Assembly: GCF_001194135.2 (NCBI RefSeq)
Contig: NC_068988.1
Coordinates: 52,193,512-52,256,779 of the forward strand
Length of the DNA: 63,268 nucleotides
Source: Octopus bimaculoides
Taxonomy: Eukaryota
Reading direction: 5' to 3'
Both the position numbers and the translations under genes were made by a program. Of this stretch, positions 2,758 to 36,694 are shown in pieces (the first letter of the stretch is position 1; every line of letters starts with the position of its first letter). Below the pieces are notes generated by a model that saw only the letters and a list, made by a program, of their open reading frames with translations, was not told where the DNA came from and searched no databases.

Positions 2758-2964
2758 TGTGTGTGTATATATATATATGTCATTTAGTTCCTACACCAGA
2801 CTTATTCCACTATCATTTCCTTCATTTAGTCATTTCTTTGATAACATACACAACTAGACTTCTCATACTTGAAATAAATTATCAACTCTTTGCATAAAAA
2901 AAAATATTAAATAAAATAGTGTTGTCAGGCTTCTCTATATTTCCGCTATTAATTTTTTTTCTAG

Positions 2965-3057
2965 TCACTGTCCAAGAAACACGCTTGTATAGAAGTCACA
3001 GGCCGTTCTCACTTACTCTATGATATGAGCAGCCGCAATAAGTCTCGAAGAGGAACA
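2965..3057 (+). CDS. MDC1: MDC1 exon, FHA domain (SLSKKHACIEVTGRSHLLYDMSSRNKSRRGT)
   Basis: ttttctag acceptor and GTAAGT donor; 93 bp, phase 0-0; FHA S-x-x-H and N motifs. Confidence 0.92.
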
Positions 3058-5391: not shown

Positions 5392-5433
<42 letters not shown>

Positions 5434-8400: not shown

Positions 8401-10684
8401 TCATATTTTGCTTGCTAGTAATATTAAGAAGGACAATGAATCATTCCATGCTCTCTTGGACTTTTTTATTACATTTCCTTACAATTCTGGTTCATGTTGC
8501 ATTTCTTGTTATTTCAGCTGAAGTACTTGCTGTAGATTCCAGTCCAGAGAACCAAGGGGAATCATCTTATCTCAAAGATAGAATATTTTTCCAGAATAAT
8601 GGTATATTCAATGTATTTTCTTTAAGTGTGTCCTCATTGTCATAGCCATAATCATTCATTATCATCATTTTCCAACCACCTTCCTATTCCAGCATCTCAG
8701 CATTTCACCATCATTGTGTTTCTTTGTCATCTAGCTGTCACAGGAACAAAGAAAACCCACCAGTTTCTGTTAATGTGCATGTCTGTACTACCAGTCATCA
8801 CTTCCTCTCCTCTGATTGATAGTCATCATTGTCCCTTATTCATGTTGATCATCAACCACTCTCCACTTTTCTTCACCATTTACTACGTTCATTTCTACCT
8901 CTATTTCTAACCATCTCTCTCACTCTGCCACCACATTTTTACAACTTTTACCCTCCTGCCTTTCCTGATCATCTATCCACACACTCTCTTCTATTCAACT
9001 TCTGAAGATACAGTGTCACCACCATCTTTCCAGCTCCATTCCATTTACTCCTACCCAAGCTCATAAAATGGCTTAGCCTCATATTTCCTCTTTAACAACA
9101 AATCTATTCATGTTGCTCCTGTCACACTCCAATCTCTCAGCACCTCGCATAAAGCCTCCTCTACTATATTCCTTTTTGGTCAAGTAGGCTCTACGGTGAC
9201 ATCACTAATGCTGATGCCATGAAAAAACACTCGGTACACACTGTAAAGTGGTTGGTGTTAGAAAAGGTATCCAGGTGTAGAAACCATGTCAAAACTGAGT
9301 TACTAGCATGAGACATGCTTCTCCAACATGTTAAATTCTTTCAAACCATCCCAACCCATGCCAGCATCGTTAATGATGATGGTCTTACAGCTGAATACCA
9401 TTTTTGTTGCCAATGATTTTGAAACATGAATTGCCTCATTAATGACAATAAAAAATATATATCATCATCATCATCATTATCGTCGTTTAACGTCCGCTTT
9501 CCATGCTAGCATGGGTTGGACGATTTGACTGAGGACTCGTGAACCGGATGGCTACACCAGGCACCAATCTGATTTGGCAGAGTTTCTACAGCTGGATGCC
9601 CTTCCTAACGCCAACCACTCCGAGAGTGTAGTGGGTGCTTTTACGTGCCAGCGGCACGAAGGCCAGTCAGGCGGTACTGGCAACGGCCAAGCTCAAAATG
9701 GTGTATTTTACGTGCCACCTGCACAGGAGCCAGTATATTTGTGAAAATTGTAACAAATGTGGAGAACATACAGGAAATAGCATTAATAGGCTCCACACTT
9801 TCATTTATGTAGAGTATTCTCAATACAATATGAAATATTAACCAAAAAAAAAAATTTGCCTCTTATCAAAGGTGTTTGGTTATGCACTGAAAGCATGCAG
9901 TGAAATTTTTTTTTCTTTTTTGAGCCCTAGGACTCCTTGAAAGGGATGTCAATCCATTACAGGCTTTAAGGTTTGCAATCCTGAGGCGAGGGAACAAGTT
10001 GATTATTTTGAACCCTTGTACTTGACTAATAGTTTATTTTGTTGACCCTGAAAGGATGAAAGGCAAAGTTGTCCTTAGTGGAATTTGAGCTTAGGGTGCA
10101 AAGAACTAAAACAGCTGCTAAGCATCTTGTCTGACACGCTCATAGTTCTGCCAGATGAATTATAGGCGCAGGTGTGACTGTGTGGTAAGACGCTTGCTTC
10201 CCAACCACATGGTTCTGGGTTCAGTCCCACTGCACGGCATCTTAGGCAAGTGTCTTCTACTATAGCCTCGGGCTGACCAAAATCCTTGTGAGTGGATTTG
10301 GTAGATGGAAACTGAAAGAAGCCCGTCATCACTGCTTGACAACCAGTATTGGTGTGTCTATGTTCCTGTAGCTTAGTGGTTCAGCAAAAAGACTGATAGA
10401 ATAAGTGCTGGGCTTTAAAAAGAAAATAAGTCCTTCGGTCAGTTTGTTTGACTAAAACCCTTCAAGGCTGTGCTCCAGCATGGCTGCTGTCAAATGACTG
10501 AAACGAGGTGAAGAATAGTTGTTAATGTTAATATTATTATTGGCTTTCTAAGTTTAGCATTTTAAAGGGGTTTATAGTCAGTTTGCTTAACCCCAGTACT
10601 TGATAGCTTCTTATTTTCTTGTAATGTGCACCACTAATTGATGGCAGTTAACTCTCGGAAAACTATATCTCAGATGTTGATTTT

Positions 10685-10719
<35 letters not shown>

Positions 10720-19700: not shown

Positions 19701-22700
19701 GGTGGACACACACACACACACACACGAGGAGTTTCCACACAGCTTCTGTCCACTGAACTCAATGGTCATCCTGGGGCTAGAGTTGAAGACACTTGCCCAA
19801 AGTGTCCTATAATGGGACTGAACATGAAACAACATTTTTTTTTCTTTTGTTTGGACACTGACATGGATAAGGCAGGTCTTCACCAACACAACAATCTTGT
19901 TGCTAACTTTTAGCAGATCAAGCAATCGTGTAAGGGAGGCCTTCCCCTGTTGAGTCTCAGTATTCTTGCTTGCTGTATTATCCTAGATATATTGTGCTCA
20001 AACAAGACTGCGATTAAAAGCATTCCAGTTGTGACAATCCAGTTGTTTTGTGCCTCAGGAACTATGTTGTTAATATTTAAGATGGTAAATAAATATTGAT
20101 TTCAAAGTTTGGCACATGGTCAACGATTTAGGGGGAGAGGGTAAGTCAATTACATTGACCCCAGAACACAACTGGTTCTTATTTTATTGACCCTGAAAGG
20201 ATGAAAGGCAAAGTCAACCTCAGTGGAATTTGAATTCAGAGTGTGAAAACGGACAAAATGTCTCTAAGCATTTTGCCAGGTGTGCTAATGATTCTACCAG
20301 CTTGTTGCCAATGGTAAATAAATACTAACAACATGATCCTACACCAGCTTCACATAACCAGCCCCTGCCCATCCAAAGTACCTTGGATTGTAGGGCGACC
20401 TGCTGTGCTTGAGGAGACCTATTGAATCAAGTACATCAGCATCAAAATAAAAATCAAATGGAAATTGTAGTTGTGATACCTGTGCCGGTGGCACGTAAAA
20501 TGCACCATCTGAATGTGGCCGATGCCAGCGCCACCTTGACTGGCTTCCATGCCGGTGGCACATAAAAAGCACCAACTGATCGTGGCTGTTGCCAGCCTCC
20601 TCTGACCCCTGTGCCAGTGGCTCGTAAAAAACACCCTCTACACTCACGGAGTGGTTGGCATTAGGAAGGGCATCCAGCTGTAGAAACACTGCCAGATCAG
20701 ACTGGAGCCTGGTGCAGCCTCCTGGCTTCCCAGATCCCGGTCAAACTGTCCAACCCATGCTAGCATGGAAAACGAATATTAAACGATGACGATTCCTGGA
20801 GTGCAAAAAATAAAAAAAAACAACTGGATTGTCATAAGTGGATTACTATTCTTTTTTTTTTTTGCAACTCAGGAATTATGTCATTAATATTCAAGATGGT
20901 AAAGGCAGTGAGCTATCAGAATTGTTAGCATGCCAGAAAAATGCTTGGCAGCACTTCATCTGCCTTTACATTCTGAGTTTAAATGCTACTGGGGTCAGTA
21001 AAGTAAGTACCAGCTGAACACTGGGGTCAATATAATCAACTTATTCCCGCCCTCAAAATTTCTAGCCTTGTGCCAAAGTTTGAAATCAGTATTTAAGATG
21101 GTAGAGTGTAATTTGTGTGATTTGTCTGTTATTTTCAGAAAGTTGGCCAATTTTGTGTTAGATCCCCCTGAACAAATTTGTTTGCCAATGACATGCACAC
21201 ACTCTCTCACTCTCTCTCCGTCTCACATACACACGCTCTCTCTCTCTCTTCCTTTTGTTTAATGTGGTAGAAGGAATATGTTTGTTCGTTACTTCAGTGA
21301 GGTAGTTGCTGTTTGGAGCAGTTATTTTCAGTTAAACGTAAACATATGAAAACATTAAAATCATTATTATTAAGCTGTGGATTGGCCAGATTATTAGAGC
21401 AATAGGCAAAATGCATTGCAGTATTTGATTATGACCTGTTATGTTCACAGTTCAAATCCACTGAGGGTAGATTTATTTTTCATCTTCCCAGGGTCAATTA
21501 CAATCAACTGCTTCTCCCAGATTTCTGGCCTTCTCTCTTATGTTAGAAACTATAATTTTTGTGCCATCAAAGACTGGGATTTGGAATTTGCTTGTGTCAA
21601 ATTCCTCTAATATTCATTAATACTCTTTCAGGTCTGAGACGTTGTGGCAGAGTTGTGTTGGCATTGCTGATTCAGTGCCACCTTATTCAGTATTAAATGT
21701 TTTAATGTTTCTTTTGTTCTCTTTTTCTCTGTCTGTCTGTCTCTCTCCCCCCTCTCTCTCTATCTATCTATCTATATGTGTGTGTGTGCAAGCATCTAGT
21801 TATGTTTGTATGTATGTGTAGTGTCTCTCATTCTCTCTCTCCCTCTTTTTACACATTGTGTATATTTCTGCCTGCATGCGTATGTGTTTGCCTCCAATAC
21901 CAAAACATACTGTTGCCCAAAACAGATTGAATGTCCAATCAGTCTCACCAGATCATCAGCGTTGAAATAGATACACCTAATTGTCTCATTCTGATATCTT
22001 CCTTTAACTCCAGATAGCTTTTTGGGGTAAAAAGCAGTGTTCTTTTCTTAATGCCAGAGTATGAAAATGTTGCATGTGAGAGGTTTATATTTTTAATTTC
22101 CCATATGTAAATTGCTCAGCATTATCATATTTAGGATATTGTGATTTTAACAAGACTTGTCTCAAATATGATCTTCATCATTGAATTGTCTTTGCAGATC
22201 ATTAATCTCTCTTCATGAATTTCAGGTGATAGTTGTCAGTACAAGCAAAGCTACTGATGAGGAACTTCCTGTTGAATTAGAAGATAATGAAACCATTTCT
22301 GACATTGAGGAAGATATTAAGAGATCTAAAAGACTTAAAAAGGATGCTACTTCCACTCCAGTCTCACAAGAGGGTAAAAGACTTCTTAGAAATACGAGAA
22401 AAAATACTAAATCTACAGACACACCCTCAGAACTTATAGAAATTCCTGAACTACAAAGTGGAGGAAAACGGTCACTGAGAAATCATCCAGAAACTAGTGA
22501 TTCCCATTCTAAGGATAAGAAATCAAAAGTCAGGAAATCGATCAGATTTGATCTTCCTGATGAGGAAAGCAGTTCAGAGGAGGAGAATTATTTAGACAAG
22601 AACGTGAAACGGTCATCAAATAGATCTAAGAAAAGTTCTGCAGACATTAAAGATGACAAAGCTAATAAAAAGTTGTCTAAAGGATCGGATTCAAAATTAG

Positions 22701-25700
22701 CAGATTTAAAGAATGAAGAATGTTCTGAAGACAGCAAAACGAAAATGAAATCAAAAACTGGGAGAGGAAAAAGAACGAAAATGGTTAAAAGTTTGATTGA
22801 GAGTGAAATGGAGGCTGATGAAGATTTTGTAGAAAAGAAAAGTTTAAAATCTAACGAAATAACTGTTGAAGAGACTGAGAATATTTCTCTAGAAGTGAAA
22901 GAAGAGAATGTTGGTGACATATCAGTGTTGTCTGAAAATACGGTTGATTCTAGGAAAAGTGGGAGAGGTTTGAGAGGAAAATCTAAGCAAAATAAAGAGA
23001 AAGCACGGGAAGAAATAAGTGACTTTTCAAATACGACTAAAACATATCTGCATGTCGATATTGTGAGTGAAGATTCTAAAGTCACTCGTAAAAGTGGGAG
23101 AGCATTACGGAGTAAATCAGTAAAAGAGGTGAAAGAACCACCTGATGGAAGTGCATTGGAGACGAGCAACAATAATACTCCAAGTAGCAGAGGGAGGAGT
23201 ACTCGAGGTGCAAAGAAAGAAGTTGCTGAAGATAAAGCGCAAAGTAAAAAGGGCGGTAAAGTATCTTCAAAGAAGTCTTTAGATTCAAATAAACAAATTG
23301 AGGAGGAACCTTGCCAGAAGAGTTCCAATGAAGAAACTAAAAGTGTAAATCAGAAAGAAGACATGGAAGTAGATAAAGATGATGACTCAAAAACCAAATC
23401 AAATATTGAGGAAGAAAACACAGAAGAAAAGAAAAATTCTCAAAGTCGGACTCCAAGAAACAAGCGAAAAAAATCTGATGAAGACGTAGATAGTAAAATC
23501 TCTGAAAGGAACTCTAAGAAAAAGAAAATAGCTTCCAATGAAGAAACAGGATCGTCTCAAAATACTCCCTGTTCTTTGAAACAAAAAAGTGTTTCTGCTT
23601 CAAAAGATCATGCTGAGAATTTGAATCTAAGTTCAGATGTGTCAGCTGATACCACCGCACCCTCGAAAACTACTCCAGCAAAGAGAACTCTCTCTAAAAG
23701 ACAGTTAAGTCATTTGCAGGATACAAAAGAGGACGCTTCTGAAATGCAAGAAATGAAGACACCCGCTAAAAGGAGGGAAAATCAAAGAACTGCTAGTCAA
23801 TCAAGTAATGAGGTTTGTGCTGATTTTTGTTTTTATATAATGTATTTGACTATATAAAAGACATATAGGCATGTTAAATGCACCCCAATTTCAGCAGCGC
23901 ATATTTAGGGGGAAAAAGTTTTTAGTGCTTTAAAGTATAAGGGAAGCCCAACTTCACATGTAGGACCCAGAGTGATTGTTTTGAGATTGGTGGTGGGGCA
24001 GGTGTCTTATTTGTCATAAAGTACAGTGCCTTGACTCTTTATCCTTTTTAACACAGGATTCTCTTGAGTTAATGAAGCAGTTTCTTAGTATGCTAAAAGC
24101 CACATTTAAATTTTCTCTCAAATCACATCTTTTGACTGCAAATAGAAGGCGACATTAACGTACACTGTCTGTCACAAAAAGATGGACTGGTCACAACTAA
24201 GACACCTTTGATCATAAGTATCTTGGATCGGGACTCACTTGGGGTTAAACAATAACAACTATTGAGTATCCTGTGTCTATCACTTTTGCAGACCTTCATC
24301 TGATGTAGAAAATTGTGTACCACTTCATTCATCTGTCACATCACTTCTTGTTATATAATACCGAGCTAAGATTACAGACAGCAGTTTAGTTTTCCTTCAT
24401 AGTCCATGACATTCTCATCTTAAACAGTTCAGACATATTTACAGTTCTATCATTGGATAGGAGTCTTTACANNNNNNNNNNNNNNNNNNNNNNNNNNNNN
24501 NNNNNNNNNNNNNNNNNNNNNNNNNNNNNNNNNNNNNNNNNNNNNNNNNNNNNNNNNNNNNNNNNNNNNNNNNNNNNNNNNNNNNNNNNNNNNNNNNNNN
24601 NNNNNNNNNNNNNNNNNNNNNNNNNNNNNNNNNNNNNNNNNNNNNNNNNNNNNNNNNNNNNNNNNNNNNNNNNNNNNNNNNNNNNNNNNNNNNNNNNNNN
24701 NNNNNNNNNNNNNNNNNNNNNNNNNNNNNNNNNNNNATGCACATATACATACACGTCCATGTGTGTGTGTTTTATATATATATCATCATCATCATCGTTT
24801 AACGTCCGCTTTCCATGCTAGCATGGGTTGGACGATTTGACTGAGGACTGGTGAAACCGGATGGCTTCACCAGGCTCCAATCTAATTTGGCAGAGTTTCT
24901 ACAGCTGGATGCCCTTCCTAACGCCAACCACTCAGAGAGTGTAGTGGGTGCTTTTACGTGTCACCCGCACGAAAACGGCCACGCTCAAAATGGTGTCTTT
25001 TATGTGCCATACACAGAAAGATAAATTGATAGATACAATTGAGTGGGCAAACAAAAATATGAGACACTGCCTTGAAGAATTTTTTATCAAATGAATCGAC
25101 CCCAGTGCTTTTTCTTTATTCTGATAAGCCTGGTACTTATTCTATCAGTCTCTTCTTGTCAAGCCACTAAGTTATGGGGATGTAAATAAACCAACAGTAG
25201 TTGTGAAGCAGTAATGAGGGAGAAACAGAGACACAAAGACACACACATACACTTACATATATGTATACAATTGATTTCTGTCTATGAAATCCGCTCACAA
25301 TGCTTTGGTTGGTGTAAGGCTATAGCAGAAGACTCATGCCAAGGTACCACACAGTTGGACTGAACCCAGGACCATTAGTTTTGGAACCAAGTCTCTTACC
25401 ACACCTGCACCTCTCTCTCTCTCTCACCATATGTGTGTATGTATATATATGTATGTATATATGTATGCATATGCATGTATGTATATGTATATACATATCT
25501 ATATGTATAAATATTTGTATGCATGTATATGTGTATATATATATACACATATATACATACGTATATATATATATATGTTTGTATGCCTGTATATGTATGT
25601 GTGTGAGATAATAGTTTCAGTATTAATAGTGAAACTATTAAAGTGAAAGTATCTGACGTTATAATAGAGAGATGTTATTGCTTTGCTTTTGACACATTAT

Positions 25701-28700
25701 AATGAAAAAGTGGAAGGGGCTTGCATTAGGCAAGAAGTCAAAAAAATTTTTGACTCATGACACTACATGGACCCTAAGTAAGGCCTGTGTAAAATTTGAA
25801 TGAAATCGGTTGTGTAGTTCTCGAGTTTTAGGGATTCACACAGAGACAGACAGACAGACACATATTCTCATCTTTATATATACAGACGTTATAAAATATA
25901 AGGGAGAAGGATTGGCAGAATTGGTAGAGTGTCAGGCGCAATCCCTTGTGACATTCAGTTGTGTCACTTTACCTTCTGTGTTTGATGAATCCTGCTGGGA
26001 TACATCAACCCTTTCATACTTCTAGGTTCAATAAATAAGTACCTGTAAAGAACTGGGATTAATATGATTGATCATAACCCTTCCCCACCATTATTCGTGG
26101 GCTTGTGCTTACATCAGATTCACTATTTTCTTTATTTTCAGAGTAGTAACATGGCCACTCCTAAGAATCTCAAGTCCAACCAGTTTATATCTCCCAGGAG
26201 AAACAATGGACAGTTAAAGCCCAATGTCATGTTTACTGGTTTGACAGATGATACGGGTCAAAGGGTAAGTTACTGGGTTTTTTTTTTTTTTTGCCTTCTT
26301 GTATTTTGGTTTTCTTAAAACAGTACAATGTGAGCATTGTACCAGGTTCAAGGTAAGACTCCATTAAACCAAGCTTTTGACATTATTATGCAAATAAATG
26401 CTCCTCAAACTCAAAGGGTTTGTTAAGGGCTAGTGTTTATCTCTGATTTTATGGGGCTAAGCAGATGTGGAATAACTCATCACCTTGATAGGGCACTAGT
26501 TCATTCATTTGTAACATTTCCAAAAGATTTGGCATGAAAATGTAGGCCCTTATATCATCATCATTATCACTTTACATCTGCTTTCCCTACTGGAATGGCT
26601 TGGTTGGTTCAACAAGTTAGAGGACCATAGTTTGCTCCAGTGTCTCGGTTTTGGCTTTGTTTCTATGGCTGGATGCCTTTTCTAACATCAATCACTTTAC
26701 TTACATGTATGTATACACATATGGAGTGGTTAGCATTAGGAAGGGCATTCAGCTGTAGAAACCATGCCAAATAAGACTGAAACTTAGTGCAGCTCTCAGG
26801 CTTACCAGTTCCAATCAATCCATCTAACCCATGCTAGCATGGAAAGCAGATGCTAAATGATGATAATGTGTGTATGTATATAAAGAATTGACAGTATGGC
26901 TATGTGGTTAAGACATTTACTTTGTAACCACGTGGTTTCAAGTTCAGTGCCCACCATGCAGCCTACTATCACACTGGCCAAACCAATGCCTTGTGATTGA
27001 ATTTGGTGAACAGAAACAGTATTAAGCCCATCGTATGGTTTATGTGTGTCGTGAATGTGCAAGAATCTCAACACTTCACTTGCCACCATGTAAGTATAGC
27101 AGTGCTGACATTCCTTGTTCGTATTATGACCAATTGGCCTGCACTTTCAAAGGCCTGTAGGATATAAATCTCTTACTTGACAAACCTGATGAGGGTTGGC
27201 AGCAGCAAGAACATTTGGCCATAAAAAACTGCCTCAAAGTCAATTTCATATCCAAGCCATGCTGAGATGGAAAACAGATGTTAAATGAATAAATGAACAA
27301 TTTATAGTATTTGCTTTTAATTCTCTTTTATATAATATTTGTGTTTGCTTCCATATTTAATTTTTGAAATAAAACATAAACTTGTATTTCTTACTTGATT
27401 CTAGATTAGTAGATTGGTCCTCAAAAAGAAGTCATGTGCACACATACACATGTATATATTACACACACACACACATATTCATGTATATATGTGTGTGTGT
27501 GTGAAGATTGCGTCATCTTCACAGATGATTGCCATCTCCTTATGCTTCTTTATTGTCTCTGGCATTTCTGACTTACCATCCTGTGACCTCTTAGATGACT
27601 ACTGAGTCCCATTGCTGATCTGCATGGTTTGAAGCATAAGTGACTGACAAAGACAAAAGTTGTATATTTGTGTGCACTTCCAACTGGTTAGGTTTGCACA
27701 CGTTACCACACTTCTATTACCATAGGACTTTCAATAGATGAGGTCACCATAAAGGGACATCTGTGTGTCAGTGGATTATAATGATAGACGTTTGTACAAC
27801 ATGAGTAGCAATCTCTGATTCTCCATGATTAGTACTGTTGTCACAGCATCCATCTACAAAAGAGATATTCTAATGTAAAACTTGCAGTTTCACGTGATTA
27901 CTGGACATCTTGCTTTGGCCTGTCTCTAGGTTGTTGTTGTTGGCACTCCGTCGCTTACGACGTTGAGGGTTCCAGTTGATCCGATCAACGGAACAGCCTG
28001 CTCGTGAAATTAACGTGCAAGTGGCTGAGCACTCCACAGACACGTGTACCGTTAACGTAGTTCTTGGGGATAATCAGCGTGACACAGTGTAACAAGGCTG
28101 GTCATTTGAAATACAGGCACAACAGAAACAGGAAGTAAGAGTGAGAGAAAGTTGTGGTGGAAGAGTACTGCCGGAGCCTCGTGGAGCTTTAGGTGTTTTT
28201 GATCAATAAACACTCACAACGCCCGGTCTGGGAATTGAAACCGTGATCCTATGACCGCGAGTCCACTGCCCTAACCACTGGGCCATTGCGCCTCCACAGT
28301 CTCTAGGTACTATATATTTATAGGTACACAACTTAGTGCTGATGTTTTTTCACTTCAATGAAGATCAGTTGATAGATTTCATGTTTGCTATTTTTGTGTA
28401 AATATAATAGTTTTGTTGTTTTGTCAGATTGTTACAGAACTTGGCGGGATTGTTGGGACCAACTTTAATTGCTGTACTCACCTCATCACTGACAAGGTAA
28501 TATTGATTTCTCTTTGGTTTTATTAATAACTTCTTTGTTAGNNNNNNNNNNNNNNNNNNNNNNNNNNNNNNNNNNNNNNNNNNNNNNNNNNNNNNNNNNN
28601 NNNNNNNNNNNNNNNNNNNNNNNNNNNNNNNNNNNNNNNNNNNNNNNNNNNNNNNNNNNNNNNNNNNNNNNNNNNNNNNNNNNNNNNNNNNNNNNNNNNN

Positions 28701-31700
28701 NNNNNNNNNNNNNTATATATATATATATATATATATATTTAAATCACTTTGATCTCTGATGATCATGAGGTGTAATATTGTTAAGTATGGATATCATATG
28801 GAGGACAAGGTTGATTTTAAGCCACCTGAAGAGAAAAGGAACATATCAGATGACAGGAAAGAAAGGCTTGACAAAGTCAACCTCATCCTCCACTAACATT
28901 ACCATGCAGTGAATGCCATTAACTCTTCTATACAATAATTGGTCTACAGTCATCAATGCTATCACCATAAAGGAAGTGTTCAGCAAGGAACACTCAACCT
29001 CAGATACGAGATAAAGCTGCCACCACTAACGGACATCTTACCAAATTGGATTCAATCTGGGAACCTTTGTGTTTTAATGAAGAGTTATATTTTAACCACT
29101 AATCACTGACATTATAACCTTTAATTTAGAAGTAATCCTTTCTGCTAAGGCACAAGGTTTAAAATTTGGTGGGAGAGGGTTGCTTGATTGCATCAAGACA
29201 TTTCTCCACAGTGCCACTCTGTGGGATTGAACCCTAACCATATGACTGCAAAATGAGCTTCTTAACCACAGAGCCATGCATGCATTATGATATTCTCTGT
29301 GAAGTGAGTTTCTAGAAAGTTGAGTTGCATCTGGTATGTTGTGTGTAATTGATGGCTGCCAGTGGAGTTGAACACTAGTCTTCCTTTGGCTGTAAAGAGA
29401 TGACAGATTGCAAAGCATTACTCAATAATACTAGCCTAGGTTCCTTGTTTCAATCTAGTCTTCTAGTCTAGTACTGTGTATGCATTTAGTTATATATACA
29501 AAATGACCAGAAATCAAACTGATAGATGTAGTATTGATATATTTAAGATATTCATCTCTAAAGATGAAGTTAATAATTGGAACAATTATAAACAGTTATA
29601 ATCTAATAGCAATAAACCCATGTTAAACATTTAAGTATTTATTCCTTTACCTGATGTTACCACATAAAAAGCACTGGTGATAGCCAACATAACCTCTAGC
29701 TCAAGAAAAGACACAAAATCTTCAGATCTGTTTACAATACCTTTTCAGGTCCGCCGAACTGTGAAATTCTTGTGTTGCCTGGCACGTGGTATTCCAATCG
29801 TCTCATTATCTTGGTTGACTAAATGCAAATCTGCCAAGACGTTCATTGGTAAGTCCCTGTCAAGAGTTTTTTTTTTTTCTTCCCTGAAGGTCACAGTCTC
29901 TTTCAGTATCACAGACTGAAGATTGTCCAAAGTTAGTGAGGACTGTTGATGGAGTTACAAGAAATATTTTACAGTGCACTAAAAGCACTAGTGCTGGTTC
30001 CACATAAAAAGCACTGGTGATGGTGTCACATATAAAGCACTGGTGATGATGCCACATAAAAATCACTGGTGATGGTGCCACATAAAAAGCACCCAGTATG
30101 CTCTGTAAAGTGGTTGGCATCAGGAAGGGCATCCAGCTGTAGAAACCATGTCAAAACTGACTATGGTACCTGGTGTAACTTTTGGCCTAGCCAGCTCCTG
30201 CCAAACAGTCTAATCCATGTCAGTATAGACAAAGGATGTTAAATGGTGATAATGATGACAACTAATTAAAGTGAGTTTTTTTTTCTATCTCTAATGGATC
30301 CTTGACAAGGATTTCATTCAGATCTTTTACTTCTTTAGTTGGTGCACACTTAAATAATTCTAGTATCAGTGCCACAACAATGCCTTCCTTCAACACTGAT
30401 CAGTTAAACATTCCACCCATGACCATCTCATCTTTTTGTGTTGTATTTATTTAATGTTTCCTTAGTATTTTAAGAAAGGAAAGTGTGATTAGAATTAGAA
30501 GAAAATAATTGTAAAAAATGATCTGTTGGTATGTTCGGTGTATCTGATTGGTGATCTATGATTATAAATAGAGTATTTGATTTGCTGATGATGAACATTT
30601 AAAGTGGTTCTAGGTAGATTCACCTTCTGAACCAGCTGGATATGTGTGAAAGAACCTGGTAGAGTAGTAAATAATGGAGTGATCATATGAACATAACAGA
30701 AGGGTTTCTTTTATTTTGTGTATGTGTGGTCGAGGTTGTATTTTGGTAGCAATGCTGCAACACTTCCGACTGAATCAAAACATTAAGAGTTAGTTCTTGG
30801 CATTGTCCTGGCACATCACCATTTCTGGTGCCAGCTTCATTGGCAGTGATGAAAGTGCTAAGTCTGGGTGTGAGAGTTTAGTGAGTAATAGTAAGATATG
30901 TCTGATGACAGCACCGCCTGGCTGGCATCCGTGCCAGTGGAATGTTAAAAGCACCATCCAAGTGTGATCGTTGCCAGGGCCGCTGACTGGCTCCAATGCC
31001 GGTGGCACATAAAAAACACCATTTGAGCATGATCATTACCAGTGTCACCTCACTGGCACTTGTGCTGGTGGCATGTGAAAAACAACATTCGAGCAAGGTT
31101 GTTGCCTGTGCCGCTGGACTGGCTCCTGTGCAGGTGGCACATAAAATCACCATTTGAGCATAACCATTGCCAGTACCGCCTGACTGGCCTTTGTGCCAGT
31201 GGCATGTAAAAGCACCTACTACACTCTCAGAGTGGTTGGCGTTAGGAAAGGCATCCAGCTGTAGAAACTCTGCCAGATCAGACTGGAGCCTGGTGCAGCC
31301 ATCTGGCTTGCCAGTCCTCAGTCAAACCGTCCAACCCATGCCAGCATGGAAAGCGGACGTTAAATGATGATAATGATGATGATTAAAGGTTCAAGAAAGT
31401 AGGTGTTCAACCAGCATAATTGAGGTGTCATTTTGTTAGACAGTGGAATAAATGTATGATAGAGATATGAAATGAGTATATCTTATTTGGAGTGGGGCGA
31501 GAGTGTTAAAATATTTTCCGCTAACTAAACAGCCTTGCATGTGATATGTAATTTACGAAATTACCACATCTTCCATTGTGTTACTCATGCTGTCAGAACT
31601 TTGTTAAAATTTTCCAATAACATCTTGTTATGTATATACCAGTTATTGTATCTTACTTTGTAAAAATTGTATCACAGATTACACTCCATATATTTTATCG

Positions 31701-34700
31701 GATTCTGATGCTGAGAAACAATACAATTTCTCCTTAAGCCAGTCTCTTGAACTTGCTCGAAGTTCGTCACCACTAAAGGGGTACAAGATACATGTTACCA
31801 AATCTGTTAAACCTAATGCTGAGCAAATGAAAGGTAAATAATTTAACAACTTTATCTATCTGATGCAAGTCAAGTAAATACTGCTAAACATCACATATTT
31901 ATGATTTTTCCAAACTCTGTCTTTTTTTATTCTAACTATATTAGCCCCATCAATTATCCTCATATTCCAGTCTATGAGGAACAACAAAGAAGAACCTTAT
32001 AGACATAGTCACTTCCTTCATAAAAGCATAAAACAATATGTAATTTATAAAATAATATAACAGCCATCTATGCATCTCTATGCGATATATGATTTATAAA
32101 ATAACTTAACTGCCTCTGATAAATAATTTGTTAATATGACAGCTATCCATATATCACTCTATAGTCTAATCTTTTACCAGTTTCATGCATTGGACTGCAG
32201 CCATGCTAGGGCCTTTAAGGATTTAGTCAGTCATATTAACTTCAGTTCTTATTTTGGTCTGGTATTTATTTTATTGAAATCTGTTTGTTGGACTGTTGAG
32301 TTACAAAACAAAAGGACACAGCATGAACAAAAACACCAGATTTTAGACTGTTGTGAACAGACTTTAGCATTAAGAAGGGTATCCAGCAGTAGAAAACATG
32401 CCAAAGCTGACATTAGAGCTCAGCACAACCCTGTGGCTTGCCAGGTTTTTATCAAACCGTCCAACACATGCCAGCATGGAAAATGGATGTTAAATGATGA
32501 TGGTGATGATGATATATATATAGTCATCATCATTTTATTGTCTGTTTTCTTTGCTGGCATAGGTTGGATGGCTTGGCAGTAACTTACTAACCAGAGGCCT
32601 GTATTGGCCTCTTGTATCTGCTTTGGCAAGGTTTCTTAAGCAAGATACCCTTCCTAATGTCAACTGGGTAGTTTTTATATGGCACCAGCATTAGACCCCT
32701 TCGACTGAATTGGAGTAGGGTATTGAGAGAGGTAGTGGGAAGGAAAGAGGGTGGTGGTGAAAATGTGTATAGTTTATGCTAGAACATAATATATCAATGA
32801 ATAATAATGTGTATTGCTATTCACAAAACATTATAAGGTCCATGTAATGACTTAATCATTATCTTATTGTAATATATTATTATAAAGCTTTTTTTCTTTC
32901 TTTTTTTTCATACCAGAAATTATAGAGAGTTGCAAAGCAAAGGTAATTTATAAAATATTTCTATCTAAAATTGAAAGTATATATTTTTATATATGAAAGG
33001 GATTCATATTTTTCTGTGCTTATCATGCCTGTTTTCTATGCTCTTTAGATTAAATCTTAGTCTTCATTCTACTTTATTCTCTAAATTAGCTTTGCAGTTA
33101 TCCCCCCTTCACACAATCTCATTTATGTTGATTTATTTTAATGTGAATATGAAGCCAATCTATTGCACCATTTGGCACATCTTTGGAATTGTATACACAC
33201 GCACAACAAGCTGCCATCTACCAAATTCTTCTCCTAAGTTTTTATTCAGCCAGTGTTATAACACAAGACACTTGTTTAAGATACCAAGCAATAGGATTGA
33301 ACCTGGAACCATTTGGTTGTGAAGCAGACTTCTTAACCAACACAGCCATGTCTGATCATTTTCTTAATAGTTTGCGAATTAGCACTACTTTGAAAAGTAA
33401 CCTTCTGAGTCATTTTATATATCTACTTCCACCAAAGCTTAGGTACCCATAGAAACATTAAATATGCACAGAATCTAACCAACCTCTCTCTCTCATACAG
33501 ACCTTCCCAAACTATTAAAAGTTGAATATGTAACTGAAGGTATAACTAGAACTATAGTGGTGATGATGTGAAATATTTCTGTCATATCTTGCAGTTTTTA
33601 GCAAAACTTCCCACAGAGTTTAAAGAAGAAACCATTGTGATTTCCTGTGAAGATGACAAGTCATCCTGTAAGAAAGCCATCCAAGCTGGCATCCCAATAG
33701 TAGAAGCTGAGTTCCTGTTGACTGGAATACTGCAACAAGATTTATCAATAGACAAATATCCTTTCTTGCAACATTTTATTTTTCTGTATATGTATGTTTT
33801 TTGTTTGTTCAATTTTATGTTGAATTTTTTTGCATTTTGGCTTGGTCAGACAAGACTTGTTGGAACAGATTATCTAAGACCAGATGTTCTTCCTGTCACC
33901 AACCCGTGTCTGTTTCCCAAGTAAATATGTATGGTTGGTGTTAGGAAGGGCATCTAGCTGTAAAAATCTTGCCAAAACAGTCACAGAAGTCTGGTGCAAC
34001 CGTCCCACTCATGCTAGCATAGAAGATAGATGTTAAACGATGATGATGTGTGGGTGTGTGTTAGAATATGCATTAACCCTTTAGTTTTCAGATTTCTGTC
34101 AAATGTAATGCTTATTTATTTACATTCTTTTGAATTAATACGCCAGGCAAAATGCTTAACGGTATTTTGTTTATCTATAAGTTCCAAGTTCAAATTCCGT
34201 TGAAGTCGACTTTGCCTGTCATCCTTTTGGGGTCGATAAATTAAGTACCAGTTGCATACTGGAGTTGATCTCATCGACTGCCCCCCTCCTCCAAAATTTT
34301 GGGCCTTGTGCCTAGAGTAGAAAAGATTCTTTTGAATTAATTCATGCATTATCTTGTAACTTCAAGGTTTCAATGATGTGATTGTTTATTTTTAGAATGG
34401 CATTGTAGGATAAGTGAGAGAGGTCAAATCTGGCCAGTTTGAACCGAATACGGCTAGTTTAAATGCAAAGAGTTTAGTGAGAGTGAGTGTGTGGTGTGTA
34501 AAGTCTTTTTGTCTTTTTTGGCTCACAATTCAGTAGAATTTAGCACATGAAAGAAGAATCTACCTGTAATTAGGACATCAGTTTATTACACGTGAATTAA
34601 ACTGGTGAATTTTGGAAAACAAGTTGGAAAGTCCTGTCCAGAGGGAGAGACAGCCAAAATACCTCACTGTTTTTATTAATGCTCTTAAGAAAGGTATAAA

Positions 34701-35589
34701 TGTCACAATTCTTCCTTTCTCATGCAATATTAAGCCGTTTCAGCATCAGCATCATTGTTATCATCATTCAACATCTGTCTTCCATGCTGGTGTGATTTGG
34801 GTGGTTCAACAGGAGCTAGCAAGCCAGAGGACTGTGTCAAGCTCCGTTGTCTGCTTTGGCATGGTTTCTTCAGCTGGATGTCCTTTCTAATACTGACCAC
34901 CTTGCAGAATACACTGGGTGCTTTTTACGTGGTACCAGCACTGGTAGGTCACTATGTACCTTGCAAGACAAAGACACCCTCAACTGAGAGGAGTAGTGGT
35001 ATTGAGGGTGGTGGCTTTGTGTCAAGTGATGGGGGGTTATTGACAGAAACAGGTTTTTTGCTGTCAAGGAGATACATGATTACCCCAGTTAAAGTTGGTG
35101 GGGAGAGAGAAAGAGAGATGGCAGTCGTGCTAGGGCATATCCTCAAGGTACAAGGAGGTGAATGTAAATGACAAAAGAAACCTTAGTTTTATGTAAGTTA
35201 ATGTTAAGATGCGGATTGATGGTCGAATAGAATGCTTTGAGATATTTGTTGTGGCTTTCTATGCTCCAAGTTCAAGTCCTGTGGGTGTCACTTTTGCTTT
35301 CCATTCCTTCAGGGTTAATAAAAAAAAAAGTATTCATTCAGGGCAATAGATTGGCAGAACTTAGGGGATCATGTGCAGTCATGGCTGTAAAGATACACAC
35401 ATATAAATATAAACATATATATATACTGTATTTTAATGTGTATAAGGAACCCCCTAATTTTGGGGGCTTAAAATTTGGAAAAAAGGTTTTCTAAGAGATT
35501 ATGATACTGTCCATGTATAAGAAACTCCCATATATTTTTAACCTAATTTTTGACAAAAAAGGGTTCATTATACACGTTAAAATATGGTA

Positions 35590-35645
<56 letters not shown>

Positions 35646-36694
35646 ATGAGTTCCTTTCAGTGTCTGTCTACCAAATCCATTCACAAAGCTTTGATCAGCC
35701 CTGGGCTATAATAGAAGACTCTTGCCCAAGGTGTCACACAGTGGAACTGAACCCAGAACCATGTGGTTGGGAAGCAGACTTCTTAGCACATAGCCACACT
35801 TGCACCTATATTTATCTACCGATCTATCACACACACATACCACAGGTTTCTTTCAGTTTCCATCGACCTTATCCACTTACACAGCTTTGGTTGACCTGTG
35901 ACTATAGTTGAAAACACTTGCCAAAGGTGGTGCTACATAATGGGCTTCACCTGAAATCACGTGGTTAGAAAGTGTGTGTGGCTGTCTGGCTAAGACATTT
36001 GCTTCAGAACTACATTGCAATGGGCTGACCAATGCAGTGTGAGTGAATTGGTTGCTGGAAACCGATCATATAAATTAGTGTGTTTGTGTCTTAACATTTG
36101 TACCAGGAAAATCAAGTAATTGTTCAAAGAACTTGGGGAAATATTGATTTCAAATTTTGGCACAAGGCCAGCAATTATGGGAAAGAGGTAAGTCGGTTGT
36201 ATCGCCTCCAGTACTCAACTGGTACTTATTTTATCGACCCTGAAAGGATGAAAGGCAAAGTCGACCACAGTGGAGTTGGGGAAATATTAATTGCTAGGAA
36301 ACAGATGTGATTTGACAACAAGAAGATCTTCTGGCTATAAAATATTTAAAAGAAAGATCTCTCTCAACAAGTTTCTTCTTGTTCATGTAAGCATGAAATA
36401 ATGGAGATTAAAAATGATGAAGGTGATGTATATATATATATATATGTGTGTGTGTTTTTTTAACCAAATGTTACAGTTTCTAAACAAAAAAGAAAGTAGT
36501 CAATACATGTTGCAGTGTTTATTTGAGTTAAGATTTTGGGTTGCTGGTTCAGTTTCATTGTCTATTGCATGTTGTTTAGTTGCCTTAACAACAGTACATA
36601 TCAGATCTTTCAGACATCACCAACCAGTGAAAAATGCAAACAGCCTGCTCCTACAGAGAAGAAATCCAGAACCACAAGAAAAACCAAGAAATGA
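2965..36694 (+). CDS. MDC1: Mediator of DNA damage checkpoint protein 1-like, multi-exon and 5'-incomplete: join(2965-3057,3303-3392,4596-4763,7530-7596,8518-8601,13381-13458,16680-16750,17772-19023,19477-19508,22226-23812,26142-26264,28428-28496,29749-29848,31678-31833,32917-32942,33595-33755,36598-36694)
   Basis: N-terminal FHA (SLSKKHACIEV...LVFADVSCQY), long S/T/P- and K/E-rich linker, C-terminal tandem BRCT (VMFTG...[30 protein letters not shown]...EFLLTGILQQ) closely matching the MDC1 architecture as I recall it; all 16 junctions are phase-compatible, giving ~1417 aa to TGA. Confidence 0.9.
3303..3392 (+). CDS. MDC1: MDC1 exon, FHA C-terminal part (LFLTPEVRYELKHKDTLVFADVSCQYAIEE)
   Basis: tttcag acceptor and GTGTGT donor; 90 bp, phase 0-0; matches the MDC1 L-x-FAD-x-x-CQY pattern. 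Confidence 0.92.
4596..4763 (+). CDS. MDC1: MDC1 exon (IARASDSGSNTES...DILLPTQ)
   Basis: tttttccag acceptor and GTAGTG donor; 168 bp, phase 0-0; acidic Ser/Thr-rich. Confidence 0.85.
4804..5151 (-). mobile_element. RTE-clade LINE, 3' end of ORF (runs into gap)
   Basis: Translation LREKLNIRSISCGVQERRLRWYGHVVRMDEDSCVKKC...GRGRPRKTW...TDRDLW is the characteristic RTE ORF C-terminus; near-identical to 43057-43202. Confidence 0.9.
5152..5318. other. Assembly gap (others: 12726-13020, 24472-24736, 28542-28713, 40367-40737, 43203-43419)
   Basis: Runs of N. Confidence 1.
7530..7596 (+). CDS. MDC1: MDC1 exon (DFPVHELTKHSSQGLANISPVK)
   Basis: ttgctgcag acceptor and GTAAGG donor; phase 0-1; creates TQDF with the previous exon. 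Confidence 0.8.
8518..8601 (+). CDS. MDC1: Probable MDC1 exon (AEVLAVDSSPENQGESSYLKDRIFFQNN), possibly a cassette
   Basis: Good acceptor (tttcttgttatttcag) but weak donor (G|GTATAT); symmetric 84 bp, phase 1-1, so it can be skipped without frameshift. Confidence 0.55.
9461..9734 (-). mobile_element. RTE 3'-UTR / SINE tail (family A); further copies ~11218-11507, 12461-12725, 20339-20793, 30910-31383, 47175-47627 (+) and 24780-25010, 62160-62350, 63070-63268 (-)
   Basis: Conserved CACTCTCGGAGTGGTTGGCGTTAGGAAGGGCATCCAGCTGTAGAAAC...CCAACCCATGCTAGCATGGAAAGCGGACGTTAAACG ending in a (GAT)n tail; lies downstream of an RTE ORF at 43057-43702 (across a gap). Confidence 0.85.
11713..12150. repeat. ~45-bp minisatellite, about 9 units, with a 90-bp (46+44) higher-order dimer
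   Basis: CATCCACTTGTGAC starts at 11713, 11803, 11893; CACCCACTTGTGAC at 11759, 11849; decays rightward. Confidence 0.9.
12322..12461 (-). mobile_element. Tail half of family E SINE (Penelope-like tail), interrupted by a family A insertion
   Basis: Reverse complement matches 13120-13257. Confidence 0.75.
13021..13257 (+). mobile_element. Family E SINE: tRNA-like head + (AAT)n + Penelope-like tail with degenerate hammerhead core
   Basis: Head GGCGTAGTGGTTAAGAGC...GAGTTCGATTCC; tail CTAATGA-A-GGCTG-loop-CAGCT-GAAAC at 13173-13201. Confidence 0.7.
13381..13458 (+). CDS. MDC1: MDC1 exon (ANKEDNIDAEILAAATQAYVADSDDD), ending at a GC donor
   Basis: cttccag acceptor; G|GCAAGT donor; phase 1-1; contains TQAY. 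Confidence 0.8.
16680..16750 (+). CDS. MDC1: MDC1 exon (ESKSEVYDTENPIAIVADTQSPKE)
   Basis: ttacag acceptor and GTGAGT donor; phase 1-0. Confidence 0.8.
17772..19023 (+). CDS. MDC1: MDC1 large Ser/Pro/Thr-rich exon
   Basis: ttctag acceptor, 1252 bp open in the 448-aa ORF frame, G|GTAAGT donor; contains ATQPY and many SP/TP sites. Confidence 0.9.
19477..19508 (+). CDS. MDC1: MDC1 small exon (DLETKASEKSN)
   Basis: ttacag acceptor and GTAAGT donor; 32 bp, phase 1-0, which bridges the two large exons. Confidence 0.8.
22226..23812 (+). CDS. MDC1: MDC1 large Lys/Glu/Ser-rich exon
   Basis: ttcag acceptor, 1587 bp open in the 558-aa ORF frame, GAG|GTTTGT donor; phase 0-0. Confidence 0.88.
26142..26264 (+). 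CDS. MDC1: MDC1 exon, start of BRCT1 (SSNMATPK...LKPNVMFTGLTDDTGQR)
   Basis: tttattttcag acceptor and GTAAGT donor; P-x-V-x-FTG motif. Confidence 0.92.
27930..28297 (-). mobile_element. tRNA-derived SINE (family D) with 10-bp TSD
   Basis: GTCTCTAGGT at 27922-27931 and 28299-28308; homologous to 578-956. Confidence 0.88.
28428..28496 (+). CDS. MDC1: MDC1 exon, BRCT1 (IVTELGGIVGTNFNCCTHLITDK)
   Basis: ttgtcag acceptor and GTAATA donor; LGG...THL BRCT motif. Confidence 0.92.
29749..29848 (+). CDS. MDC1: MDC1 exon, BRCT1 ([33 protein letters not shown])
   Basis: cttttcag acceptor and G|GTAAGT donor; RRTVKFL is the phosphopeptide-binding signature of MDC1/PTIP-type BRCT pairs. Confidence 0.95.
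31678..31833 (+). CDS. MDC1: MDC1 exon, BRCT linker and BRCT2 start (DYTPYILSDSDAEKQYNFSL...GYKIHVTKSVKPNAEQMK)
   Basis: atcacag acceptor and G|GTAAAT donor; phase 1-1; D-x-x-x-EK-x-x-x-FSL linker motif. Confidence 0.93.
32917..32942 (+). CDS. MDC1: MDC1 26-bp micro-exon (EIIESCKAK)
   Basis: Long poly-T tract + taccag acceptor, AAG|GTAATT donor; supplies the BRCT2 'EII-x-x-CGG' equivalent and the needed phase 1-0 change. Confidence 0.88.
33595..33755 (+). CDS. MDC1: MDC1 exon, BRCT2 (FLAKLP...IVISCEDD...EFLLTGILQQDLSID), ending at a U12 AT donor
   Basis: cttgcag acceptor; exon ends AA|ATATCCTTT. Confidence 0.9.
33756..36597 (+). other. U12-type (minor spliceosome) AT-AC intron, 2842 bp
   Basis: 5'ss ATATCCTTT at 33756; branch TGCCTTAAC at 36581-36589; terminal AC at 36596-36597; no polypyrimidine tract; joining restores the frame. 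Confidence 0.88.
35423..35590. mobile_element. Short non-autonomous DNA transposon (MITE), 23-bp TIRs
   Basis: ATACTGTATTTTAATGTGTATAA vs reverse complement ATACCATATTTTAACGTGTATAA; TA context suggests the Tc1/mariner/pogo superfamily. Confidence 0.7.
36598..36694 (+). CDS. MDC1: MDC1 terminal exon ((K)YQIFQTSPTSEKCKQPAPTEKKSRTTRKTKK*)
   Basis: Follows the U12 AC acceptor; in-frame TGA at 36692-36694; basic NLS-like tail. Confidence 0.8.

What the first reader, a model, noticed from the sequence alone, without database searches (positions are those of the whole stretch)
33756..36597. U12-type AT-AC minor intron as the last intron of MDC1
Seen: AA|ATATCCTTT donor, TGCCTTAAC branch site, and AC nine nt after the branch A, with no polypyrimidine tract. 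Splicing gives ...LSIDK-YQIFQ...RKTKK*. Established: this is the minor-spliceosome consensus; AT-AC introns are rare and often rate-limiting. Retention would replace the basic tail with a hydrophobic read-through (YPFLQHFIF...), which is what the ORF track and GT-AG-only predictors produce. Inference: minor-spliceosome control of the C-terminus/NLS of a core DNA-damage mediator. I do not know whether this intron is catalogued or conserved in other MDC1 genes. An AC at 36591-36592 would give another frame but is too close to the branch site.
Basis: partly seen in the sequence, partly recalled or inferred. Interest (0 to 1): 0.72.

Follow-up and report, generated by a model that had tools for sequence, protein, structure and literature searches.

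The report
Minor-type AT-AC intron in octopus MDC1
The last coding intron of the Octopus bimaculoides DNA-damage gene MDC1 is a genuine but ordinary minor-spliceosome (U12-type, AT-AC) intron that public gene models already splice correctly; the modest new point is that it is ancient, being shared with other molluscs, with annelids and with the sister gene PAXIP1, and lost in vertebrate MDC1.

Summary
At 33755|33756 the exon ends GACAA and the intron starts ATATCCTTT. TGCCTTAAC lies at 36581-36589, and AC at 36596-97 lies 9 nt after branch A 36588. Joining 33755 to 36598 gives ...LSIDK-YQIFQ...RKTKK*.

The window is Octopus bimaculoides. RefSeq MDC1 isoforms X1 and X2 and UniProt A0A0L8GN63 end with exactly this junction. 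When X1 is mapped on the window, this is the only AT-AC intron among 17 (15 GT-AG, 1 GC-AG).

A U12-type intron sits at the same codon and in the same phase (2) in MDC1 of five other taxa:
- Lottia: AT-AC.
- Lymnaea, Capitella, Lamellibrachia and one metagenomic eukaryote: GT-AG.

The paralog PAXIP1 has it too: AT-AC in Amia calva, and mouse Paxip1 is in a published minor-intron list. Fish, lizard and Trichoplax MDC1 have no intron there.

The spliced tail matches a C-terminal basic tail conserved from a chytrid to vertebrates, and it scores best of six alternative junctions.

No RNA reads could be examined. Verdict: real, a routine member of a known class, already in public annotation, with a small evolutionary point added. 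Low interest.

The parts
1077..36694 (+). MDC1 gene of Octopus bimaculoides: 18 coding exons covering residues 46-1481 of XP_014779485.1. The first 45 residues lie upstream of the window.
   Evidence: Exact mapping of P0143 on the window. FHA domain PF00498 and BRCT families. PDB best hit is human MDC1 BRCT. Names.
33595..33755 (+). Penultimate coding exon: the end of BRCT2 (FLAKLPTEF...AEFLLTGILQQDLSID + AA of the Lys codon). It ends in phase 2.
   Evidence: It aligns to the end of the human MDC1 and PAXIP1 BRCT pairs.
33756..33764 (+). U12-type 5' splice site ATATCCTTT, a 9/9 match to the AT-AC consensus.
   Evidence: Identical in a ~90%-identical contig of a related species (L006), while the cryptic GT stretch downstream is not conserved there.
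33756..36597 (+). AT-AC intron, 2842 nt, phase 2. It is the only non-GT/GC intron among the 17 in the window. It holds microsatellites and an inverted pair of interspersed repeats.
   Evidence: the only junction with recognised termini that reproduces the RefSeq protein. (repeats).
33757..33924 (+). Read-through frame that intron retention would translate (YPFLQHFIFLYMYVF...LFPK*).
   Evidence: It scores 18.1 bits against the profile of ortholog tails, against 38.3 for the spliced form.
36581..36589 (+). Branch-point sequence TGCCTTAAC (8/9 to TTCCTTAAC, core CCTTAAC exact). The presumed branch A is 36588.
   Evidence: The assignment of the branch A rests on the published consensus and is an inference.
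36596..36597 (+). 3' terminal AC. The C lies 9 nt after the branch A.
36598..36694 (+). Coding part of the last exon: A + YQIFQTSPTSEKCKQPAPTEKKSRTTRKTKK + TGA. The 3'UTR follows. The nearest polyadenylation-like hexamers are ATTAAA at 36747, 36919, 37029 and 37397 and AATAAA at 37401.
   Evidence: The 31-residue tail is 100% identical to the C-terminus of XP_014779488.1.

Best explanation
Positions 33756-36597 are a genuine U12-type (minor-spliceosome) AT-AC intron, the last coding intron of Octopus bimaculoides MDC1.

Mechanism, inferred from the established U12 pathway and not tested here: U11 and later U6atac pair with ATATCCTTT at the 5' end. U12 pairs with GCCTTAAC and bulges A36588, which attacks the 5' splice site. 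The exons are then joined at the AC 9 nt downstream. This completes the Lys codon AA|A and appends a 31-residue tail that ends in a basic cluster (RKTKK).

The intron is old. It occupies the same codon and phase as U12-type introns in MDC1 of other molluscs and of annelids, and as the AT-AC last intron of the paralog PAXIP1. The position therefore most likely predates the MDC1/PAXIP1 split. It was lost precisely in vertebrate MDC1 and is also absent in Trichoplax. Its subtype switched between AT-AC and GT-AG in different lineages.

Nothing indicates it does more than an ordinary constitutive minor intron.
For: Sequence and gene model:
- All U12 hallmarks are present at the stated coordinates.
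- An exhaustive phmmer search with the last-exon peptide found a single protein, XP_014779488.1, MDC1 isoform X2 of O. bimaculoides. It is 100% identical at its C-terminus and contains ...LSIDKYQIFQ... Isoform X1 (the same sequence as UniProt A0A0L8GN63) has the same end.
- Mapping X1 onto the window requires exactly 33755^36598. This is the only AT-AC junction among 17 introns; the others are 15 GT-AG and 1 GC-AG.

Protein conservation:
- Orthologs from a chytrid, Trichoplax, molluscs, annelids, fish and a lizard carry a tail of the form [YH]-x-[LI]-[FS]... ending KRRKR, GRGRKKT or KTRKK.
- Against a profile of 33 such tails the AT-AC product scores 38.3 bits. The alternatives score 31.2 (AG 36594), 25.3 (GT 33792 with AG 36594), 18.1 (read-through), 12.6 and 11.5.

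Orthologous U12-type introns at the same codon, phase 2:
- Lottia: CAATC|ATATCCTTTA...TTCCTTAAC, 11 nt, AC.
- Lymnaea: AAATC|GTATCCTTTT...TCCTTGAT...AG.
- Capitella: GAGTT|GTATCCTTTT...TTCCTTAAT, 13 nt, AG.
- Lamellibrachia: GACCA|GTATCCTTTG...CTTAAC, 11 nt, AG.
- Metagenomic eukaryote L003: AGGAC|GTATCCTTTT...CCCTTGAC, 10 nt, AG.

PAXIP1:
- Amia calva: GAATC|ATATCCTTTC...TTCCTTAAT, 9 nt, AC|G TAT AAA TTC ACA TGA.
- Mouse Paxip1 is listed with 5' splice site ATC|ATATCCTTT in Olthof et al. 2019 (PMC6717393 supplement).
- The split codon aligns without gaps between MDC1 and PAXIP1.

Background:
- Phase 2 fits the known bias of U12-type introns against phase 0 (PMC7367187).
- Molluscs are relatively rich in minor introns (PMC10639083).
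Against: - No RNA evidence was examined.
- The 8-mer and 7-mer motifs are not enriched in the window.
- The distance from branch site to 3' end (9-10 nt) is at the short end of what is usual for U12-type introns.
- The branch site has one mismatch (G at its second position).
- An in-frame AG three bases upstream (36593-94) could serve as an alternative acceptor.
- Common ancestry with the PAXIP1 intron is inferred from position, phase and class only.
Confidence: 0.9

Rival explanations
1. The intron is normally not removed. The mRNA reads through 33756 and the protein ends with the hydrophobic extension YPFLQHFIF...LFPK*.
For: The frame stays open for 56 codons. Gene models of several other species end this way.
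Against: - The read-through sequence has no counterpart in any ortholog and scores 18.1 bits against 38.3.
- It is already frameshifted by a 7-nt indel in a ~90%-identical related species.
- No AATAAA lies within about 800 nt; there is only one ATTAAA, at 34596.
- The read-through models in Lottia, Lymnaea, Lamellibrachia and Amia all have a downstream exon that encodes the conserved tail.
Confidence: 0.03
2. A U2-type GT-AG intron uses a cryptic donor (CT|GTATAT at 33786 or AT|GTATGT at 33792, both phase 2) and the AG at 36593-94.
For: Both donors are in the right phase, and AG 36593-94 keeps the tail frame.
Against: - It would insert about 12 hydrophobic residues where orthologs align without a gap, and it scores 25.3 bits against 38.3.
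- The GT stretch is not conserved in the related octopus contig, whereas ATATCCTTTCTTGCAA is.
- The public proteins do not contain the insert.
- Six other taxa have a U12-type donor at exactly this codon.
Confidence: 0.02
3. The same U12-type intron is used, but some or all transcripts use the AG at 36593-94 (AT-AG). This gives ...SIDN-T-YQIFQ..., one residue longer.
For: It is in frame and scores second best, 31.2 bits. Non-canonical AT-AG termini occur in a small minority of U12-type introns (established knowledge).
Against: - The AG ends only 6 nt after the branch A, too close for U12-type 3' site choice by the known distance rule.
- The public models use the AC.
- The AC form fits the ortholog profile better.
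Confidence: 0.04
4. The motifs are a chance coincidence in AT-rich non-coding DNA, and MDC1 ends elsewhere.
For: The motif counts in the window equal the chance expectation.
Against: - My estimate: the donor falls on the one nucleotide where orthologs have their U12 donor (about 2.5e-5 per position). The branch-site motif lies within the roughly 100 nt in front of the conserved tail frame (about 6e-3).
- The joined product is identical to the RefSeq protein.
Confidence: 0.01

Closest known systems
Last intron of PAXIP1 (PTIP), a U12-type AT-AC intron. Mouse Paxip1 is in the minor-intron list of Olthof et al. 2019 (PMC6717393).
   Same: - It lies after the last helix of the C-terminal tandem BRCT, in the codon just before a conserved Tyr, in phase 2.
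- It is U12-type with an ATATCCTTT donor.
- In Amia the AC lies 9 nt after the branch A, as here.
- Only a short tail is left for the last exon.
   Different: - It is a different, paralogous gene.
- The PAXIP1 tail is only YKF[NT]* and not basic.
- The PAXIP1 intron is retained in vertebrates, whereas the MDC1 one is not.
Orthologous MDC1 introns of Lottia, Lymnaea, Capitella and Lamellibrachia
   Same: Same gene, codon, phase and U12 class. The downstream exon encodes the same kind of basic tail.
   Different: - The subtype is GT-AG in Lymnaea, Capitella and Lamellibrachia, and AT-AC in Lottia and octopus.
- Lengths run from 78 to 2842 nt.
- Three of these public gene models read through the intron.
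Vertebrate MDC1 (Oryzias javanicus, Phrynocephalus forsythii; human and mouse by list)
   Same: Same protein architecture, and in fish and lizard the same basic C-terminal tail.
   Different: - There is no intron at this position, and the tail is contiguous with BRCT2.
- MDC1 is not in the human/mouse minor-intron list.
Minor introns as 'molecular switches' limited by unstable U6atac (Younis et al. 2013, PMC3728624)
   Same: It applies in principle to any gene with a single U12-type intron.
   Different: - There are no data for this gene or organism.
- As the last intron, its retention would leave FHA and both BRCT domains intact and change only the tail.

Membership tests
U12-type (minor-spliceosome) intron, AT-AC subtype | 5' splice site matching /[AG]TATCCTT | tested here: met
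   ATATCCTTT at 33756-33764.
U12-type (minor-spliceosome) intron, AT-AC subtype | Branch-point sequence close to TTCCTTAAC near the 3' end | tested here: met
   TGCCTTAAC at 36581-36589, an 8/9 match with the core exact.
U12-type (minor-spliceosome) intron, AT-AC subtype | Short distance from branch site to 3' splice site (about 10-15 nt) | tested here: met
   9 nt from A36588 to the terminal C, 10 nt to the first exon base. This is at the short end. The orthologs have 9-13 nt.
U12-type (minor-spliceosome) intron, AT-AC subtype | AT...AC termini that restore the reading frame of the real protein | tested here: met
   It is the only junction with recognised termini that reproduces XP_014779485.1.
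U12-type (minor-spliceosome) intron, AT-AC subtype | No strong polypyrimidine tract | tested here: inconclusive
   The last 40 nt are 60% pyrimidine with a longest run of 4. The U2-type introns of the same gene range from 50 to 75%, with runs of 4-22.
U12-type (minor-spliceosome) intron, AT-AC subtype | The junction is present in mRNA | not testable with these tools
The support is indirect: the public protein models and an intron-free Logan contig, read here as a spliced transcript, of another species that encodes the same kind of junction and tail.
U12-type (minor-spliceosome) intron, AT-AC subtype | Excision depends on the U11/U12/U4atac/U6atac snRNPs | not testable with these tools
   This needs an experiment. 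Published surveys report minor introns in molluscs, including Octopus sinensis (PMC10639083).
MDC1 (mediator of DNA damage checkpoint 1) | N-terminal FHA domain | tested here: met
   PF00498, E=2e-8, from the exons at 1077-3392.
MDC1 (mediator of DNA damage checkpoint 1) | C-terminal tandem BRCT closest to that of MDC1 | tested here: met
   Human MDC1 BRCT structures score 164 bits (E=1.7e-47) against 112 bits for PAXIP1. The Pfam families are PF16770 and PF16589. RefSeq names the protein MDC1.
MDC1 (mediator of DNA damage checkpoint 1) | Binding of phospho-H2AX, and the SDT/TQXF repeat functions | not tested
   Not examined.

The most novel reading that the evidence does not exclude
The U12-type intron at the end of the BRCT pair was inherited from the common ancestor of MDC1 and PAXIP1. 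It has been kept as a minor intron for hundreds of millions of years because slow or stress-sensitive minor splicing gates production of the C-terminal basic tail, a candidate nuclear localisation signal. That would couple minor-spliceosome activity to the supply of DNA-damage mediators in animals that keep it. Vertebrates would have released MDC1 from this control by precise intron loss.
Probability: 0.07. Interest if true: 0.55.

Novelty: new member of a known kind. Interest (0 to 1): 0.22.

Why it matters
For octopus it matters little. The junction is already in RefSeq and UniProt, and the intron is a textbook U12-type AT-AC intron.

Three small things are worth keeping:
1. An intron position shared by MDC1 and PAXIP1 adds a datable, very old U12-type intron. 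It shows subtype switching (AT-AC and GT-AG) and clean loss in vertebrates and Trichoplax, which is useful for studies of minor-intron evolution.
2. Several public gene models lose their true C-terminus because the predictor read through this intron. They are Lottia LOTGIDRAFT_103252, Lymnaea, Lamellibrachia LSAT2_021845, Amia PAXI1 and a deer PAXIP1.
3. The basic C-terminal tail of MDC1 is conserved from a chytrid to reptiles, and its function could be tested.

Tried and rejected
I did not try to reach read-level data by another route.
- First word-indexed protein search: it missed the octopus protein itself. Only the exhaustive search with the last-exon peptide found it.
- Exact look-ups of three window ORFs found nothing.
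- Eleginops P0015 had no locus on record.
- Motif enrichment in the window is not above chance. The other ATATCCTT hits (17474, 53186, 46437 on the minus strand) lie in non-coding or repeat context.
- The polypyrimidine argument does not discriminate.
- Rfam gave no hit anywhere in the window.
- Literature: no paper links MDC1 to a U12-type or minor intron. The held supplements of the intronIC/IAOD paper and of the pan-eukaryotic survey contain no gene lists, and one paper had no held supplement. No paper describing a C-terminal nuclear localisation signal of MDC1 surfaced.
- Rejected readings: read-through, cryptic GT-AG, AC at 36591-92, AG at 36603-04, and chance. See the rival explanations.
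Full report
**What is in the sequence.**
- The exon ends ...ATA GAC AA at 33755, and the next nine bases are ATATCCTTT.
- TGCCTTAAC lies at 36581-36589.
- AC lies at 36596-97. Its C is 9 nt after the second A of TTAAC (36588).
- The sequence then continues A TAT CAG ATC TTT CAG ... to TGA at 36692-94.
- Joining 33755 to 36598 gives ...LSIDK|YQIFQTSPTSEKCKQPAPTEKKSRTTRKTKK*.
- Reading through gives ...DKYPFLQHFIFLYMYVF...LFPK* and stops at 33922-24.

Taken alone the motifs are not remarkable. ATATCCTT occurs 4 times against 3.2 expected, and CCTTAAC 9 times against 7.6. The other ATATCCTT copies sit in non-coding or repeat context. The pyrimidine content in front of the AC (60%) is no lower than in front of the gene's ordinary acceptors (50-75%). 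The case rests on position, frame and comparison.

**The gene.**
- Exons on the + strand encode an FHA domain (PF00498, E=2e-8) and a tandem BRCT (PF16770, PF16589).
- The BRCT pair is closest to human MDC1 among solved structures: 164 bits (E=1.7e-47) against 112 bits for PAXIP1.
- An exhaustive phmmer search of 1.84 billion representatives with the 31-residue last-exon peptide returned one protein, 100% identical at its C-terminus. It is XP_014779488.1, 'mediator of DNA damage checkpoint protein 1 isoform X2 [Octopus bimaculoides]'.
- Isoform X1 (XP_014779485.1/86.1) is the same sequence as UniProt A0A0L8GN63 and has the same end.
- The window is therefore O. bimaculoides, and public models already contain the proposed junction.
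- Mapping X1 exactly onto the window gives 18 coding exons (residues 46-1481; the first 45 residues lie upstream of the window) and 17 introns. Fifteen are GT-AG, one is GC-AG (13459-16679) and one is AT-AC (33756-36597, 2842 nt, phase 2).
- It is the last coding intron. Whether the 3'UTR holds another intron cannot be told.

The support is comparative.
- MDC1 orthologs from a chytrid fungus, Trichoplax, molluscs, annelids, fish and a lizard all continue after the last BRCT helix with [YH]-x-[LI]-[FS]... They end in a basic cluster such as KRRKR, GRGRGRKKT, AKRRR, or KTRKK in the slug Arion.
- A profile of 33 such tails scores the six possible octopus C-termini as follows:

| Junction | Bits |
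|---|---|
| AT-AC at 36598 | 38.3 |
| AT-AG at 36595 | 31.2 |
| Cryptic GT 33792 with AG 36594 | 25.3 |
| Read-through | 18.1 |
| AC 36591-92 | 12.6 |
| AG 36603-04 | 11.5 |

- A genomic contig of a closely related species (Logan SRR11869391, about 90% identical) keeps GACAA|ATATCCTTTCTTGCAA unchanged. It has a 7-nt indel and substitutions in the stretch that holds the cryptic GT donors. As a result the read-through frame differs between the two species.
- An intron-free Logan contig, read here as a spliced transcript, of another, unidentified species runs uninterrupted through ...LSLEEYKLFADE...KRRKR*.

**The same intron elsewhere.** At the same codon, always in phase 2:

| Taxon and gene | Donor | Branch site | Branch A to 3' end | 3' end | Length | Tail or calls |
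|---|---|---|---|---|---|---|
| Lottia gigantea MDC1 | CAATC\|ATATCCTTTA | TTCCTTAAC | 11 nt | AC | 394 nt | FRLFGEGSNKTPQKGRSRKR* |
| Lymnaea stagnalis MDC1 | AAATC\|GTATCCTTTT | TCCTTGAT | not determined | AG | not determined | YSILTAGNTQSTDKRRSKKK* |
| Capitella teleta MDC1 | GAGTT\|GTATCCTTTT | TTCCTTAAT | 13 nt | AG | 78 nt | |
| Lamellibrachia satsuma MDC1 | GACCA\|GTATCCTTTG | CTTAAC | 11 nt | AG | not determined | |
| Metagenomic eukaryote L003 | AGGAC\|GTATCCTTTT | CCCTTGAC | 10 nt | AG | 94 nt | |

- Two further gene calls end in the tell-tale read-through '...EYP[LF]' (P0033, P0041).
- The public models of Lottia, Lymnaea and Lamellibrachia read through the intron and lose the real tail.
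- In Oryzias javanicus, Phrynocephalus forsythii and Trichoplax adhaerens the tail is contiguous with BRCT2, so there is no intron at this position.
- MDC1 is not in the human/mouse minor-intron tables of Olthof et al. 2019, which do contain PAXIP1.

**The paralog.**
- Those tables list mouse Paxip1 with a 5' splice site ATC|ATATCCTTT and an intron at chr5:27742504-27744114.
- PAXIP1 BRCT5-6 is the closest relative of the MDC1 BRCT pair. It aligns without gaps here...LTGVLTQTLDYES-YK to ...LTGILQQDLSIDK-YQ.
- In Amia calva the PAXIP1 locus reads GAC TAT GAA TC|ATATCCTTTC...TTCCTTAAT, 9 nt, AC|G TAT AAA TTC ACA TGA. That is an AT-AC intron in the homologous codon and phase.
- The Amia and a deer PAXIP1 model read through it ('ESYPF', 'ESYPL').
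- Independent gain of two U12-type introns at one codon is very unlikely. The parsimonious reading is a single old intron that predates the MDC1/PAXIP1 split. It was kept in PAXIP1 and in lophotrochozoan MDC1, lost in vertebrate MDC1 and absent in Trichoplax, with switches between the AT-AC and GT-AG subtypes. This is an inference from position, phase and class.

**Mechanism.**
- Shown here: the sequence signals, the frame, the conserved product, the orthologous and paralogous introns, and the public models.
- Inferred from the established U12 pathway: U11/U6atac recognise ATATCCTTT, U12 pairs with GCCTTAAC and bulges A36588, and the nearby AC is chosen by distance.
- The phase fits the published bias of U12-type introns against phase 0 (PMC7367187).
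- Molluscs are reported as relatively rich in minor introns (PMC10639083). Most mollusc orthologs of human minor introns are also classed as minor (PMC11347168).

That the tail is a nuclear localisation signal is plausible from its composition and conservation, but it is untested, and I found no paper on it. That minor splicing controls it is speculation.
- The intron is the last one, so retention would leave FHA and both BRCT domains intact.
- Vertebrates and Trichoplax do without the intron while keeping the tail.
- No expression data were available.

**Verdict.**
- The classification as a U12-type AT-AC last coding intron of MDC1 is well supported (0.9).
- The junction is already in public annotation, and the kind is entirely known.
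- No paper linking MDC1 to minor splicing was found. This makes it a new, unremarkable member of a known kind.
- The side results are the shared MDC1/PAXIP1 position, the vertebrate loss, and a set of misannotated C-termini.
- Interest is low.

Noticed in passing
L001 12541-12934 (Lottia); L011 8071-9038 (Lymnaea); L012 13667-15520 (Lamellibrachia); L010 from 9899 (Amia PAXIP1): Public gene models read through the U12-type intron. They end in spurious residues ('SYPLLYKLF...', 'SYPFLTFSSLS', 'QYPLTIESM...', 'SYPFMVSEQ...') and miss the real last exon. The models are LOTGIDRAFT_103252, a Lymnaea unnamed product, LSAT2_021845, Amia PAXI1 and a Cervus hanglu PAXIP1-like protein.
   Followed up: yes
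window 13380-13458 and 13459-16679: The 79-nt exon encoding ANKEDNIDAEILAAATQAYVADSDDD is the piece absent from RefSeq isoform X2. It is followed by the gene's only GC-AG intron (atg|GCAAGT), so it is a cassette exon with a weak donor.
   Followed up: partly
proteins P0001-P0055; window 36659-36691: MDC1 orthologs from a chytrid (Gaertneriomyces), Trichoplax, molluscs, annelids, fish and lizards end in a short basic cluster (KRRKR, GRGRKKT, AKRRR, RKTKK). From memory, the human protein ends differently, without one. The function is unknown; it may be a nuclear localisation signal.
   Followed up: partly
window 55978-56445 (-): An uninterrupted 155-aa ORF matches the TRAPP component family end to end (PF04051, E=5.5e-44). 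It is either a TRAPPC6-like gene without introns or a retrocopy.
   Followed up: partly
window 40193-40366 (+) and 43081-43200 (+): Transposable-element remnants lie next to assembly gaps. One is a mariner-type transposase fragment (PF01359, E=4.6e-4, below the curated cut-off). The other is a peptide that looks like the tail of a retrotransposon ORF but has no Pfam match.
   Followed up: partly
window 34193-34302 and 36168-36277; 35584-35647: Inside the AT-AC intron there is an inverted pair of 110-nt interspersed-repeat copies (75% complementary) 1.9 kb apart, and a (TG)n(TA)n(CA)n microsatellite. The same repeat family is scattered through the window.
   Followed up: no
window 5152-5318, 12726-13020, 24472-24736, 28542-28713, 40367-40737, 43203-43419: There are six runs of N (1487 bases in all). 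Four of them lie inside MDC1 introns. None touches the finding.
   Followed up: yes
window 36414-36848 (+): A 144-codon ORF in another frame overlaps the last exon. It is the frame that AG 36603-04 or AC 36591-92 would enter. It has no homolog support (11.5-12.6 bits) and is taken as chance.
   Followed up: yes
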